NCBI GenBank assembly: GCA_965655095.1
Contig: OZ296648.1
Span: forward strand, 70,432,001-70,496,000
Direction of reading: 5' to 3'
Source of the DNA: Haplodiscus bocki
Lineage: Eukaryota
DNA: 64,000 bases
The notes below the pieces were generated by a model. It ran no database searches, had not been told where the DNA came from, and saw only the letters and a program-made list of their open reading frames with translations. A program made the position numbers and the translations under genes. Below are positions 1 through 13,274 of the stretch, one piece after another (positions within the stretch are counted from its first letter, which is position 1; each line of letters begins with the position of its first letter).

Positions 1-1300
1 GTTCATTCACCGTTCTGCAATATTTGATGGGCAAGTTGGTCTGGCGCGACCGAAGAGGTTATTTTGCAGGTAGTTCTACCGTTGTTCAGTCTTTTAAGCT
101 TTTTGCAAGCTTCCTGGGATTCTTTTGAGAGATTAAAGGCTGAATGACCGCGGTCAATTCTTCCCATCGTTTTGACGCAAGGTAGTGGGCAAGTTTCTCT
201 CCGAGATCTGAAAATGTTTTGAAGACATTCGAGTCAAAAGCCTTGCAATATCCATCATAGAGTTTTCGTGTCTCAAGGTCCAAACCAGAGATATGAATTC
301 TGCGACAGCCCCTGGGAATCGTCTTTCTGGCTGCTGATTTAATCCGGTCAACAAATATGGTGTAATTGCCAACGGTTGGTTCAAATTTCAGAACTTCTGT
401 CAATTTTTTTCTAGAGGCTTCCCAATTGGCCTTGCGAACGTTGAATCTTTGTTTGAATTCGGTCTTCCGATACTCGAGAGCAGTGTTAAAGCCAAAACAT
501 ACTGGTTGGTGTTAGGATGCTGCGATGGGTTTGAGTATTGTCTTTGAGCAGCATGGTGTGGGGACGTTACTAACGAAGACGAGGTGCGGGTTATAACCAT
601 GTTTCTACCTCGCAATGTGGAACGAAGCCACTGGCCGGTGAGTATGTATTAGGGACAGTTCCATTGCTTGAGCGCCAGCTAAAAGAATGCTTCAATCTGT
701 TTTCGTCACTGTATCCCCAAAGCCGGTGGTGGCTGTTAAACTCCCCCGGTGACCAGGTGAACGTTTTTCTAGCAGCTAATAATTAACAGTAGGGAGCTCG
801 CTGGTAGGAGGTTTGTATACACTTGCAATAGAAATGTTATCAAAATTTACAGACATAACTTCAATGCCATCGCCATAGATTGTCTTTTCGGTCTTCTCAG
901 GGATTATATCTGATTGGACGAAGAGCGTTGCCATGTTTGGGGTGGTGGATTTCATTTATGAAAGTAGAGCCAGAAGAGATAAGGGGTCTAGTAGTCTTGA
1001 AACTTCAGTGGGTTTTTCGAAGCACAACCGCGATGATTTTTTCAGCTGCGCAGATAGTTTTCAAAAGCTCAGCTTTTGCTCTGCTGAAACTTTCACAGTT
1101 GAAAGACATTATCATCCGGTTGCTTGTCTTTGGCATTAATTTTTCTCGTTCGTGGTCACAATGCCGTGGACCCCGTCCCCTGTTGGCTTGGTAACCGTAG
1201 CTTTATCTCTGATTTGACTGGTGGTGTAAGGATTGGTAGACGATGCCATTGCAATCGTCCAGAGCCAGGGTCGCCGCGTGGAGGCTCCTTAAATGACCTC
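1..1300 (-). mobile_element. Non-LTR retrotransposon 5' portion (APE endonuclease plus linker; Ingi/Vingi- or RTE-X-like), pseudogenized, runs off window
   Basis: Minus-strand translation across stops and frameshifts: MPKTSNRMIMSFNCESFSRAKAELLKTICAAEKIIAVVLRKTH (ATG at 1136), GEFNSHHRLWGY, HGYNPHLVFVS, RFNVRKANWE, AARKTIPRGCR. These are APE endonuclease motifs plus the post-EN linker. Clade assignment is tentative. Confidence 0.85.
1227..1300 (-). ncRNA. HDV-like self-cleaving ribozyme (predicted) at the 5' end of the LINE
   Basis: RNA reads GAGGUC-AUU-UAAGGA-GCC-UCCACGC-GGC-GACCCU-GG-CUCU-GGACGAUUGCAAUGGCAUCGUCU-ACCAA-UCCUUA. P1 GAGGUC/GACCCU (G1.U wobble, one A.C mismatch), P2 UAAGGA/UCCUUA, P3 GCC/GGC, L3 UCCACGC, P1.1 CC/GG, 9-bp P4 hairpin, J4/2 with C-C-A-A. 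Confidence 0.8.
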
Positions 1301-4300
1301 AATGCTAATAATAGAGTAATCTATTTTTCCGTATTGATTACGTTTGGCAGTTTTGAATAGGTGTTGTGATAATTAAGACACCCATTGCGTAGATTATCCT
1401 TCCGTCTAAAAGCTTTCTAAGAGAACTCCATAGCTTTATTGATTGAGAAACGTAGTAAAATTCGCCATAGTTTCCATACATTGACTGCAATTCTCGGAAA
1501 TACAATAAACGTTTTTAAGATGTTGACATAATTTGCAGGTCATTTTACAGTGAAAGCGACAACTTCGCAGTACTTGAAACTTTATTCTAACTTTCCCGAG
1601 GGAGGGTACAAGAAACATGAACTATATTTTTTTTCTGCCGCGAAACAGGAAAATATACAATTCGATAGAATTTGTGCTTTTCTCCAGAATTTTCGATGAG
1701 ATTCGCGCGAACGTGAGCTCCCGTATACTTCAAGCTCATTCGGGAAGCTAAAATCAGACAATTTTTAAACTAATGGCTAACAATGAAGAGCCGGAATCAC
1801 TGAAATTGGGCTAACACCAATTTCCGGGTTCGAGTCCAACTACACGGTGACATTTCGTTAACGATTTGTCAGCACTTTTAATAAAATGAAAATGTCTCAT
1901 CATTATACCTTGTTTTGTTCATCGTGTAATCAATGAGAAAAACGAGAAATCGATATTTTGTGCACACCCAAAAGATGAGTGGTCACGCACACCCAGAATA
2001 CCTTATATTACACCAAATGCAGCTTTTCACCTTTGCGAGGTTTTCAAAAAATTGACCAAAAATGGTGATTTCCCCCCTTTTTTGCTAGTACCGAAAATTT
2101 TTCGGAAACTTCAATTTTCGAGAACAACAAAAAGTTCTCCAGAGAAAGTTGTTTGTCTTTCCAGGTTAATTCATTTAGCTTACCAATGTTTAAGAAATTT
2201 GCACATGAAACACCGCGAAGATGAACAAGTACCTGCCAAAGGAGGCCGTTTCTGACTGTTTACACGATATCATCAGACTATTAGATGACGTCAAAAACAA
2301 GATTAAAAAACTGCACAGGTCGGCTTCAATGCACTTTCTTTCAGTCAGAATGTGTTAGAAGATTTTACGCGGAATTTTTGACTATTTTTAGCCCAGTCCA
2401 CCAATTTGCAACTCAGAATTTGAAATGATTCATTTGCAATTCAGAATTTATAACTCATGTAACAATTGTTTCCTCTGACCAAATTTTTTCGCCATTTCTC
2501 AGATAACTTCACGGCAATTTCTTTCAAATCTTCAAGAAACATCTTTTCATATCTTCACGAAAGTTGAACTTTCGCGTAAAAGTGGACGAAAATTGATTTA
2601 GGTGCTTCTGCACAGTACCAAAAAAACTTGTAACTGTTGGAAGTTCCATCACAAATTAGCCTCATGCGTTTCCGCTTTTTCAGTTATTACGGCTTCGAGT
2701 AAAACGAGAATGCCCTTATGTCGACGTTTGGTCTTCAGGCGAGCGGAGCGAAGCCTAATCGCACAAGGACACGTCAAAATGAGTTCGATTTTCCCCTCCG
2801 TGACATCTCTCTACGTTTCATCTCTTGAAATCTAAATTTCTCAGCACCTTTTGGTCGGAGTTATCTGGTTTTTAGATAAATACTACGAGGGGTTCACGAT
2901 CTATCATATCCCAAAACTCCAGCCGCCGAAATTTCTTCGGCGAGTTATTAGCAGAAAAATTAAATTTTTGGATTTTCCAGAGGGCGGCGAAGCCTATACT
3001 TTTGATTCTTGTCTTTACAGTAACCTTCGAAACGCTTATTTTTTGGCACTAATTGAATACCTTTCCGTTAAACAGTCTGTGACAATTTTTATCAAGAAAT
3101 CTTTCGGCCAGGTTTTACCAGAAACAGTAGATAATGAACTTTTTGAAACAGAGTTGTTAGCTACCTCATTGCCCACTGCGTTTGTTAACTTTGACGCCAG
3201 TTTTCTCCATGCGCATTTGTAGGATCCGCTTATTGCTTAGTTGAATAGGCAAGGCCATACTAAACACGGCCGAAATTTTCGGAAACCGGACATTGTTTCG
3301 CCTGCGAGTTTCCGGCAAAAACAATTGAAAACCCAGTTCTTTAAAAGTAAAGTGGTACATTACCGCACTTTTCTTACCCAATATCACATATATGGCGGCC
3401 CAATGCCGCCTAACCGATGGAATTTGAAGCGTTAGTTTTTGGTTGTTGGCCAAAAATTTTGATTTTTCTACAAAATTTCGGGCGAAATATTCAGGAAGAA
3501 ACTGTTTTCAAATAAACTTCTCCACTAACTGAAGTCTAATGCGTTCAGCATTTCTAAACATGACGCCTATCACCTATGGTGATGAATATATTGAACAATG
3601 TGTCCAGTAAAGGGTTTTGATGCAAGTTTTGAATACGAACGAACTTTTCAAGGATTTATTGCCGAAAGTTGTCAAAAAGGTCTCCCTGAGACCTACCGAC
3701 TAAACCAAAGACATTTCCGGTTTCACAAACGATATAAGTAAACTCCGCTTCGTGATTTCCGCTGGAACACCTTGAAGAAGCAGTCGAGAACTTTTCCGGG
3801 TACGGTCGGTCGTAGACAGGAGGTCTGGCAAAAGTACTTTTTAGACGTAGAGCAGTTTTTTCTCAATTGTTGTGGCTTTTGGTGATAATTTGCTACGACT
3901 GGATTAAATTGCCTGGGTGTGGGCCTCCTAAGAATCTCTGAAATCACCTCAGGGTTTTCGCGACCTTCGGGTAGCGCGAAACGTAATTTCATTGAGTTTC
4001 ATCAGAAATGCCCTATTTCACATTTTTTTAGACCCTGCCATACTCAAACCGCATTTGCCAAACAGCGACTGGTTTTCCATGACTTTCAAAATGACAAAAT
4101 GCTCTTTGTTAGTTAGACTTTCTTTTGAAAAAAAAATAGCCTACATCGGTCATCTGTGTGTTCTCTGCCTAATCTATTCCGCTTCTGTCACATTCTCTCC
4201 AGCGTTGCTTAAGCTAGTGATAATCAATGTAAAAAAGAGGTTGAGTACCTTCGCAAGCGTTGCGCTAGTCACCTTAACGCCTTTGTTTCATTTCTTTCGC

Positions 4301-12921: not shown

Positions 12922-13214
12922 TTCAAGGACTGAAAATGATCGAAGTAAAGATAAGCAAGCTCAATAAAAATATCGGCCCGAGAGCGCACCCGAAAACTTT
13001 CTATTGTTTGGAAATTTCTGCCTTGGCTGAGTGAATCTCTCCCGGTTAAATTCGCGCTGGCACTGTTATTGTCTTTGAGCTAAAAAAGGCTGACATCCAA
13101 AAGAAGCTTTTGTCGGTTGGTATCAATATATATAGTTTTTAGTTTTTAAGCCAAGTGATGACCGGTCCAGTAAGGTCAGTGAGCTATGTTCGTGAAACAC
13201 TCGGCGTTTCCTTA

Positions 13215-13274
13215 CCCCCCCCCCCCCCCACACACACACACACAAACACACACATAACATACACCACACACACA
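13215..13274. repeat. C15 run followed by imperfect (CA)n microsatellite
   Basis: Directly visible, ~300 bp upstream of the RDH start codon. Confidence 0.95.

What the first reader, a model, noticed from the sequence alone, without database searches (positions are those of the whole stretch)
1227..1300. Complete HDV-like ribozyme fold marking the 5' end of an APE-type LINE
Seen: on the minus strand every element of the nested double pseudoknot is present in the right order within 74 nt. These are P1 with G1.U wobble, 6-bp P2, 3-bp P3 with 7-nt L3 (UCCACGC, close to the CPEB3 ribozyme's UUCACGU), 2-bp P1.1, a P4 hairpin and J4/2 C-C-A-A. It ends 90 nt upstream of the endonuclease ATG (1136), and AT-rich flank begins immediately 5' of G1300. 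Known: HDV-like ribozymes process the 5' ends of R2, RTE and L1Tc/ingi elements. Inference: this family defines its 5' end by self-cleavage before G1300. P1 is only 6 bp with one A.C mismatch, so this copy may be a variant or damaged. It is invisible to the ORF track.
Basis: partly seen in the sequence, partly recalled or inferred. Interest (0 to 1): 0.82.

Follow-up and report, generated by a model that had tools for sequence, protein, structure and literature searches.

The report
HDV-like ribozyme relic heading a LINE
A 74-base self-cleaving-ribozyme fold of the hepatitis-delta type sits at the very start of a dead jumping gene (a LINE). Relatives of that LINE in sea urchins and insects carry the same device in the same place, so it is a real but already familiar kind of element.

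Summary
On the minus strand, 1300..1227 holds every element of the HDV-like double pseudoknot in order. It meets a published RNArobo HDV descriptor apart from one A x C mispair at P1 position 2.

- **Chance:** shuffles give about 0.04 such hits per window.
- **Rfam:** no match reaches gathering score; there is only a partial CPEB3 match (16.7 bits against 35).
- **Own covariance model:** built from nine ribozymes found upstream of related LINE ORFs, without the window, it ranks this site first in the window (25.9 bits, E about 0.002).
- **Relatives:** the LINE's protein relatives (Diadema antillarum, Nilaparvata lugens, metagenome contigs) carry HDV-like ribozymes 37-200 nt upstream of the ORF, on the sense strand. 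Their helices covary strongly. Independent copies share sequence from G1 onward and have unrelated flanks.
- **This copy:** a different repeat begins at 1304, so the LINE's 5' end lies at 1300-1303. The ORF has at least 3 frameshifts and 4 stops, so the ribozyme is a relic and its present activity is unknown.

This is a new member of a known kind. The scan had already noted HDV-like folds at LINE 5' ends elsewhere in this genome.

In passing: the relatives also keep a histone-type stem-loop at the ORF start, for which I found no published report.

The parts
1227..1300 (-). Whole HDV-like ribozyme; the predicted cleavage site is 5' of G1300
   Evidence: Sequence. Only descriptor hit in the window. 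Top hit of model R2, 25.9 bits, E 0.0022.
1295..1300 (-). P1 5' strand GAGGUC. G1300.U1267 is the wobble pair and A1299 x C1268 is the mispair.
   Evidence: Sequence. At this P1 position 12 of 16 aligned sequences have G-C.
1286..1291 (-). P2 5' strand UAAGGA, preceded by J1/2 AUU (1292-1294)
   Evidence: Six Watson-Crick pairs with 1227-1232. Six of the seven P2 pairs covary across the family.
1273..1285 (-). P3 GCC/GGC enclosing L3 UCCACGC (1276-1282). C1281 and C1280 form P1.1 with G1265 and G1266.
   Evidence: L3 fits the published pattern TYYHCG*Y. The partial Rfam CPEB3 match covers this core.
1265..1272 (-). P1 3' strand GACCCU (1267-1272) followed by GG, the 3' strand of P1.1 (1265-1266)
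   Evidence: Sequence; descriptor scan.
1238..1260 (-). P4 hairpin: 7 pairs including G1260.U1238, plus 2 inner pairs
   Evidence: The minimum-free-energy fold recovers P2, P3 and P4. Other genomic contigs carry A1258>G, which keeps the pair as G.U.
1227..1237 (-). J4/2 A-C-C-A-A (1233-1237), with C1236 as the presumed catalytic cytosine, then P2 3' strand UCCUUA (1227-1232)
   Evidence: Fits the CNRA element of the published descriptor. L013 has the same CCAA UCCUU.
1137..1226 (-). 5' leader between the ribozyme and the ATG at 1136. It holds a possible decayed remnant of the family's histone-type hairpin (GGUCC 1172-1168 ... GACC 1157-1154).
   Evidence: Sequence, compared with the hairpins of the relatives. 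The remnant is an inference.
1..1136 (-). Decayed APE endonuclease and linker part of the LINE ORF, with at least 3 frameshifts and 4 in-frame stops. It runs off the start of the window.
   Evidence: Three-frame translation. The 141-aa piece 89-511 has 235 LINE-protein relatives at E<=0.001. Family alignment A1.
1304..1566 (.). Unrelated, more abundant repeat that abuts the LINE's 5' end
   Evidence: Depth is 200-690 in run X1 against 29 for single-copy sequence. Other contigs match 1304-1449 and stop at 1304.

Best explanation
Window 1300..1227 (minus strand) is a genuine HDV-family ribozyme of the CPEB3/drz-Spur-like type. It was inherited as the first 74 nt of a single-ORF APE+RT LINE.

Proposed mechanism, inferred from established work on R2, RTE, Baggins and L1Tc elements: the active element has no need of its own precise promoter. 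It is transcribed as part of a longer RNA. The ribozyme folds as it is transcribed and cuts immediately 5' of G1. That sets the exact 5' end of the LINE RNA, which is then copied back into the genome. The folded ribozyme may also help translation of the uncapped RNA.

This particular copy is a dead insertion. Its ORF is riddled with frameshifts and stops, and P1 carries one A x C mispair. The ribozyme here is therefore a relic, and whether it can still cleave is undecided.
For: - All elements are present in order, and the site is the only descriptor hit in the window. Chance gives 0.04-0.1 hits per window.
- Model R2, built from nine ribozymes of relatives without the window, puts the site first at 25.9 bits, E 0.0022. 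The next hit scores 14.5 bits and is a G-run.
- R2 run on 86 related loci gave 17 hits. All are on the sense strand, 75-200 nt upstream of the aligned ORF start. They include L007, which was not used in training (26.0 bits).
- Descriptor hits in the relatives: 7 in 37.7 kb of 5' zones against 1 in 522 kb elsewhere.
- Covariation on 16 sequences: 88% of cells are paired against 38-53% when the partners are slid. Twelve of 19 pairs show changes on both sides. The score is 0.536 against 0.191 for shuffles, reached by 0 of 500. P1 was not part of the model's structure, yet 4 of its 7 pairs show compensatory changes.
- Rfam calls the Diadema (L003, L006) and L012 versions CPEB3_ribozyme at 59-66 bits (gathering score 35). 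Others match HDV-F-prausnitzii at 31-41 bits (gathering score 44).
- Copies of one subfamily share sequence from G1 onward and have unrelated flanks.
- In the window, an unrelated repeat starts at 1304.
- The fold is strikingly close to a published S. purpuratus HDV-like family. J1/2 AUU is the same, and P2 is GAAGGA/UCCUUC against UAAGGA/UCCUUA here.

**Inferred**
- The processing role, from the review PMC6765202.
Against: - No Rfam family reaches its gathering score on the window.
- The narrow model R1 scored the site only 10.3 bits, E 2.6.
- P1 has only 6 pairs, one of them a mispair next to the cleavage site.
- The nested fold is no more stable than shuffles (z -0.49). This is expected for a pseudoknot.
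- No same-family copy from this genome could be read base by base. No RNA data exist for it.
- My descriptors were written after I had seen the candidate.
Confidence: 0.9

Rival explanations
1. The fold is a chance look-alike. A loose motif with few fixed bases happens to fit next to a LINE fragment.
For: HDV-like descriptors fix only about 5-6 bases. Relaxed descriptors give 0.04-0.1 hits per window by chance. The scan covers very many windows. Rfam's gathering score is not reached.
Against: - The control rate gives about 5e-4 for a chance hit within 250 nt upstream of an ORF on the sense strand.
- The model trained on relatives gives E 0.002.
- The relatives have homologous ribozymes at the same place.
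- Unpaired stretches are shared as well: J1/2 AUU with the sea-urchin family and J4/2 CCAA with L013.
Confidence: 0.04
2. The ribozyme is real and still active in this copy, and may have been taken over by the host in the way proposed for the intronic CPEB3 ribozyme.
For: Only one mispair is visible in about 22 pairs, although the ORF is badly decayed. Five CpGs are retained. L030/L034 and L052 also carry a mispair at P1 position 2 (U x C), so that position may tolerate change.
Against: One surviving mispair is within what neutral decay allows by my rough estimate. There are no RNA data and no orthologous comparison. The mispair lies next to the cleavage site.
Confidence: 0.3
3. The ribozyme is real but does not mark the element's 5' end. 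On this reading the LINE's leader continues upstream, and the ribozyme serves another purpose such as translation initiation.
For: The repeat at 1304-1566 could in principle have inserted into a longer leader. An IRES-like role has been proposed for R2 and L1Tc ribozymes.
Against: In every subfamily with two or more independent copies, similarity starts at G1. L009 and L008 are truncated inside or just after the ribozyme. The repeat from 1304 onward is many times more abundant than the LINE.
Confidence: 0.05

Closest known systems
drz-Spur HDV-like ribozymes of Strongylocentrotus purpuratus (Webb et al. 2009; sequences in the PMC4870747 supplement)
   Same: The order of elements is the same. 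J1/2 AUU is the same. P2 is GAAGGA/UCCUUC there and UAAGGA/UCCUUA here. L3 is UUCACGU there and UCCACGC here. J4/2 is CGAA there and CCAA here.
   Different: P1 has 7 clean pairs there, and 6 with one mispair here. P3 is GCG/CGC there and GCC/GGC here. P4 is longer here.
Mammalian CPEB3 ribozyme (Rfam RF00622)
   Same: It is the best Rfam match for the P1-P3 core. The Diadema LINE ribozymes score above its gathering score.
   Different: CPEB3 is a single conserved intronic locus, not a retrotransposon end. The window scores only 16.7 bits against 35. P1.1 has two C-G pairs here, as in HDV itself.
HDV-like ribozymes at the 5' ends of RTE, Baggins, R2 and L1Tc non-LTR retrotransposons (Ruminski 2011; Eickbush 2010; Sanchez-Luque 2011, as reviewed in PMC6765202)
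   Same: The ribozyme forms the first nucleotides of the element, in the sense orientation, shortly before the ORF. Copies begin at G1.
   Different: The clade of this LINE was not determined; it has a single ORF of about 1,000 aa with APE and RT. R2 uses a different endonuclease and targets rDNA. L1Tc also carries RNase H.

Membership tests
HDV-like self-cleaving ribozymes | Nested double pseudoknot with the strands in the order P1, P2, P3, L3, P3', P1', P1.1, P4, J4/2, P2' | tested here: met
   Sequence. Both the descriptor I wrote and a published-style one find it.
HDV-like self-cleaving ribozymes | P1 of 6-7 uninterrupted pairs that begins with a G.Y pair at the cleavage site | tested here: inconclusive
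   G1300.U1267 is present and P1 has 6 positions, but A1299 x C1268 is a mispair. The strict published descriptor therefore fails, and it passes only with one mispair allowed.
HDV-like self-cleaving ribozymes | P3 of 3 Watson-Crick pairs closing an L3 that fits U-Y-Y-H-C-G-(N)-Y | tested here: met
   GCC/GGC with UCCACGC.
HDV-like self-cleaving ribozymes | P1.1 formed between L3 and the two bases after the P1 3' strand | tested here: met
   C1281 and C1280 pair with G1265 and G1266. The inner pair is C-G or U-G in all 16 aligned sequences.
HDV-like self-cleaving ribozymes | Catalytic cytosine in a J4/2 that fits C-N-R-A immediately before the P2 3' strand | tested here: met
   C1236-C-A-A followed by UCCUUA.
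HDV-like self-cleaving ribozymes | Helices supported by covariation among homologues | tested here: met
   12 of 19 pairs show changes on both sides. None of 500 shuffles reaches the observed score. These sequences come from other species, not from copies in this genome.
HDV-like self-cleaving ribozymes | Rfam gathering score of an HDV-family model (RF00094, RF00622, RF02682 and others) | tested here: not met
   Nothing reaches gathering score. The best is CPEB3 at 16.7 bits against 35. The relatives L003, L006 and L012 do pass, at 59-66 bits.
HDV-like self-cleaving ribozymes | Mg2+-dependent self-cleavage 5' of G1 | not testable with these tools
   This needs in vitro transcription.
Ribozyme-terminated non-LTR retrotransposons | Ribozyme in the sense orientation directly upstream of the element's ORF | tested here: met
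   It ends 90 nt before the ATG at 1136. In the relatives the distance is 37-200 nt.
Ribozyme-terminated non-LTR retrotransposons | Independent copies share sequence from G1 onward and have unrelated upstream flanks | tested here: inconclusive
   This is met in the relatives (L003 against L006; L041, L056, L064 and L052). For the window's own family there is only indirect evidence: an unrelated repeat starts at 1304, and extra contigs cover the ribozyme.
Ribozyme-terminated non-LTR retrotransposons | RNA 5' ends map to G1 | not testable with these tools
   No RNA run holds the stretch, and only DNA contigs were laid on it.

The most novel reading that the evidence does not exclude
This LINE lineage may carry a two-part 5' module. 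The first part is an HDV-like ribozyme that produces an uncapped 5' end. The second, 40-150 nt downstream at the start codon, is a hairpin that fits the metazoan histone mRNA 3' stem-loop consensus: an A-rich flank, GGYYYU, a UNUC loop, ARRRCC, then ACC. If that hairpin recruits the stem-loop binding protein SLBP, the element would borrow the histone mRNA machinery for cap-independent translation, for stability, or for S-phase timing. The window copy keeps the ribozyme and at most a decayed trace of the hairpin.
Probability: 0.25. Interest if true: 0.75.

Novelty: new member of a known kind. Interest (0 to 1): 0.33.

Why it matters
On its own this is one more HDV-like ribozyme at a LINE 5' end, and a decayed one. 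That class has been described since 2009-2011.

Its value is practical:
- It marks the exact 5' boundary of the element for annotation.
- It shows that Rfam's thresholds miss such relics. A model built from the ribozymes found upstream of related LINE ORFs recovers them.
- It ties together sea-urchin, insect and metagenome LINEs that share a CPEB3-like ribozyme, which bears on where the mammalian CPEB3 ribozyme came from.

The side observation of a histone-type stem-loop at the ORF start of these elements would be the more interesting lead if it holds.

Tried and rejected
- **Rfam at gathering score, whole window:** nothing.
- **blastn of 1-1700 against the window:** no second copy.
- **Word-based protein search with the 141-aa piece:** no relatives close enough to share words. 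Same-genome copies could therefore not be fetched through proteins.
- **Pfam on the three ORF pieces:** nothing significant, because the pieces are too short and decayed.
- **Read laying:** only DNA contigs were available, so it gave no RNA 5' ends.
- **Model R1, built from four near-identical CPEB3-like relatives:** too narrow. It ranked the site fifth at E 2.6 and was replaced by R2.
- **MAFFT alignments of the whole ribozymes:** the 3' halves and the P1 register were misaligned. I used alignments fitted to the model instead.
- **Second-best R2 hit, 13169-13225:** a G-run beside a (TG)n repeat, not a ribozyme.
- **Group L063, L069, L074, L079 and L081:** a conserved core-like motif about 270 nt upstream, with only two P3 pairs and no P2. 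Not accepted as a ribozyme.
- **LINE clade:** not settled. The protein atlas gave only generic names.
- **Papers not held in the library:** Ruminski 2011 and Webb & Luptak 2011.
- **Search of earlier findings by sequence:** blank.

Full report
**1. The observation**

Read on the minus strand, 1300..1227 divides as: GAGGUC / AUU / UAAGGA / GCC / UCCACGC / GGC / GACCCU / GG / CUCU / GGACGAU-UGCAAUGGC-AUCGUCU / ACCAA / UCCUUA.

These pieces form the following elements:
- P1: 6 positions, with the G1300.U1267 wobble and an A1299 x C1268 mispair.
- P2: 6 Watson-Crick pairs.
- P3: 3 pairs.
- L3: 7 nt, UCCACGC.
- P1.1: C1281 and C1280 paired with G1265 and G1266.
- P4: a hairpin of 7 pairs plus 2 inner pairs.
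- J4/2: C1236-C-A-A, directly before the P2 3' strand.

The fold ends 90 nt before the ATG at 1136. The ordinary minimum-free-energy fold recovers P2, P3 and P4 but is no better than shuffles (z -0.49). That is expected, because P1 and P1.1 are pseudoknots.

**2. Is it more than chance?**

- A descriptor I wrote finds this site alone on both strands of the window, and only when one P1 mispair is allowed. In 100 dinucleotide shuffles it gives 0.1 hits per window relaxed and 0.01 strict.
- I then took the published RNArobo descriptor for HDV-like ribozymes from the supplement of PMC4870747. It specifies P1 GNNNNN*:NNNNNY, P2 of 6-7 pairs, P3 of 3 Watson-Crick pairs, L3 TYYHCG*Y, then RN, a P4 region, and CNRA* before P2'.
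- The site meets every element of it except the single P1 mispair, and is again the only hit in the window. That descriptor with one mispair gives 0.04 hits per shuffled window.
- Rfam at gathering score finds nothing in the window. In E-value mode on 321 nt the best match is a partial CPEB3_ribozyme hit over the P1-P3 core: 16.7 bits against a gathering score of 35, E 0.067.

**3. The element downstream**

The minus strand below 1136 encodes an APE endonuclease broken by at least three frameshifts (near 925, 775 and 700) and four in-frame stops. It runs off the window start. The longest intact piece (89-511, 141 aa) had no relatives close enough to share words. In the exhaustive search it had 235 relatives at E<=0.001, the best about 40% identical. 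Full-length relatives are single ORFs of about 1,000 aa with Exo_endo_phos and RVT_1 domains. I did not determine the clade.

**4. Do relatives carry a ribozyme at the same place?**

I fetched DNA around relatives whose N-terminus was present:
- two copies from the sea urchin Diadema antillarum (L003, L006);
- one from the planthopper Nilaparvata lugens (L005);
- two Logan contigs (L001, L004);
- 80 metagenome loci found with an alignment of the APE region (A1).

Results:
- A relaxed descriptor gave 7 hits in the 37.7 kb lying within 500 nt upstream of the aligned ORF start on the sense strand. It gave 1 hit in the other 522 kb. Allowing a mismatch in P3 added L001 and L005.
- The L004 contig begins inside a ribozyme (ACC UCCUCGC GGU CCACCCC GG ...).
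- Rfam independently calls L003, L006 and L012 CPEB3_ribozyme at 59-66 bits. It gives L025, L017, L041 and L007 significant sub-threshold matches to HDV-F-prausnitzii.

**5. A model trained on relatives, applied to the window**

- Model R1, from four near-identical CPEB3-like sequences, was too narrow. The window site scored 10.3 bits, E 2.6.
- R1 was used to align nine ribozymes of relatives (A7). Model R2 was built from those with P2 and P3 as its structure. The window was not in the training set.
- With filters off, R2 ranks 1226-1301(-) first in the window at 25.9 bits, E 0.0022. The calibration is rough, within about a factor of five. The runner-up scores 14.5 bits and is a G-run beside a (TG)n repeat.
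- On all 86 loci R2 gave 17 hits at E<=5. Every one is on the sense strand, 75-200 nt upstream of the aligned ORF start. They include L007, which was not in the training set (26.0 bits), and a new group: L041, L056, L057, L064 and L052.

**6. Covariation**

I counted pairs on the alignment of 16 sequences fitted to the model (A8), using the full pseudoknotted structure.
- 88.4% of cells form standard pairs, against 38-53% when the partners are slid.
- 12 of 19 pairs show changes on both sides.
- The covariation score is 0.536 against 0.191 in shuffles, reached by 0 of 500.
- P1 was not part of the model's structure, yet 4 of its 7 pairs show compensatory changes.
- The window's own helices add pair types of their own (U-A and C-G at the inner end of P1; U-A at the outer end of P2).
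- The alignment is fitted to P2 and P3, which favours those two helices.

**7. Is G1 the 5' end?**

In the relatives, copies of one subfamily are alike from G1 onward and unrelated before it. This holds for L003 against L006, and for L041, L056, L064 and L052. L009 lacks only the first few bases of P1, and L008 is cut inside the ribozyme.

For the window, laying DNA contigs of four runs of the source organism showed the following:
- 871-1131 is single-copy at 80% likeness or more.
- Extra contigs cover the ribozyme. At 1258 the depth is 115.6 against 28.9 in run X1. Two contigs carry A1258>G, which keeps the P4 pair as G.U.
- A different, far more abundant repeat occupies 1304-1566. Other copies of it stop matching at 1304.

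The LINE's 5' end therefore lies at 1300-1303. I could not read other copies of this family base by base, and no RNA runs were on offer.

**8. What it resembles**

The fold is closest to a published S. purpuratus HDV-like family. The two share J1/2 AUU. P2 is GAAGGA/UCCUUC there and UAAGGA/UCCUUA here. L3 differs at two positions.

It is also close to metagenome locus L013, which shares P3 GCC/GGC, the GG after P1, and J4/2 CCAA UCCUU.

HDV-like ribozymes at the 5' ends of R2, RTE, Baggins and L1Tc elements are established. They have proposed roles in releasing the element RNA from a co-transcript and in translation of the uncapped RNA (review PMC6765202). Four other first-stage notes report HDV-like folds at LINE 5' ends elsewhere in this genome. 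I did not test those.

**9. State of this copy**

The ORF's four stops suggest divergence of roughly 9% by my rough estimate. At that rate two or three broken pairs would be expected in the ribozyme, and one is seen. This is compatible with neutral decay.

A mispair at P1 position 2 also occurs in L030/L034 and in L052 (U x C in both). That hints the position may tolerate change but proves nothing. Activity of this copy is undecided.

**10. Verdict**

This is a real HDV-like ribozyme by descent, at the 5' end of a dead APE-type LINE. It is a new member of a known kind.

**11. Seen in passing**

In the relatives, 40-150 nt after the ribozyme and within about 0-35 nt after the start codon, lies a hairpin that fits the histone mRNA 3' stem-loop consensus: (A)AAC GGYYYU UNUC ARRRCC A(A/C)C.
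- A strict pattern finds it 8 times in the 5' zones and once elsewhere. A looser pattern finds it in 12 loci.
- Rfam's Histone3 model gives sub-threshold hits at the same spots. The best is 29.1 bits, E 2.5e-4, against a gathering score of 34.
- On 16 sequences, 92% of cells pair and 4 of 6 pairs show compensatory changes. The second G-C pair, the closing U-A pair and loop bases U1 and U3 are invariant.
- The compensatory changes alter the encoded amino acids (KRFFSEP, KRPLSGP, KRPFSGP). The constraint is therefore on the RNA.
- Two literature searches found no report linking histone stem-loops to non-LTR retrotransposons.
- The window holds at most a decayed trace of the hairpin (GGUCC 1172-1168 ... 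GACC 1157-1154). This also suggests that the ATG at 1136 is not the original start codon.

Noticed in passing
L001 124-139, L003 1981-1996, L005 2176-2191, L006 1981-1996, L009 388-403, L010 1978-1993, L013 918-933, L017 497-512. Variants in L004, L007, L008, L012, L030, L033, L041, L050 and L056. Possible trace in the window at 1154-1172 (-).: A hairpin fitting the histone mRNA 3' stem-loop consensus (A-rich flank, GGYYYU, UNUC loop, ARRRCC, ACC) sits at the ORF start of these ribozyme-headed LINEs. Four of its six pairs show compensatory changes. The second G-C pair, the closing U-A pair and loop bases U1 and U3 are invariant. Rfam Histone3 gives sub-threshold hits at the same places. I found no published link to retrotransposons.
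   Followed up: partly
L013 737-855: This ribozyme, close to the window's, carries a 46-nt insertion inside L3, between the conserved CG and the P3 3' strand. The ends of the insertion are complementary (GATTGC...GCAATC), so it may form an extra hairpin.
   Followed up: no
L005 2001-2141 (Nilaparvata lugens, XP_039276180.1): The annotated protein starts at an ATG 6 nt before the ribozyme's G1 and reads through the whole ribozyme as if it were coding. The likely true start is the ATG inside J4/2-P2' near 2133.
   Followed up: partly
L030/L034 1818-1889; L052 295-364: Two unrelated subfamilies also have a mispair at P1 position 2 (U x C), the position that is mispaired in the window (A x C). Either the position tolerates change or it mutates often.
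   Followed up: no
L002 1-40: This metagenome contig starts inside a ribozyme whose P2 3' strand (UCCUGCUA) is identical to the one in Diadema. Its J4/2 reads UUUA, with no cytosine at the catalytic position.
   Followed up: no
window 2154-2297: A very high-copy short repeat. Contig depth is about 7,800 against 29 for single-copy sequence in run X1, with many loose ends at 2154, 2183, 2238-2240 and 2297. A second repeat at 1304-1566 abuts the LINE.
   Followed up: no
L017 359-365 and 388-394: This ribozyme can form a 7-pair P1 that begins with C-G in place of the usual G.U. That would put a C at the cleavage site.
   Followed up: no
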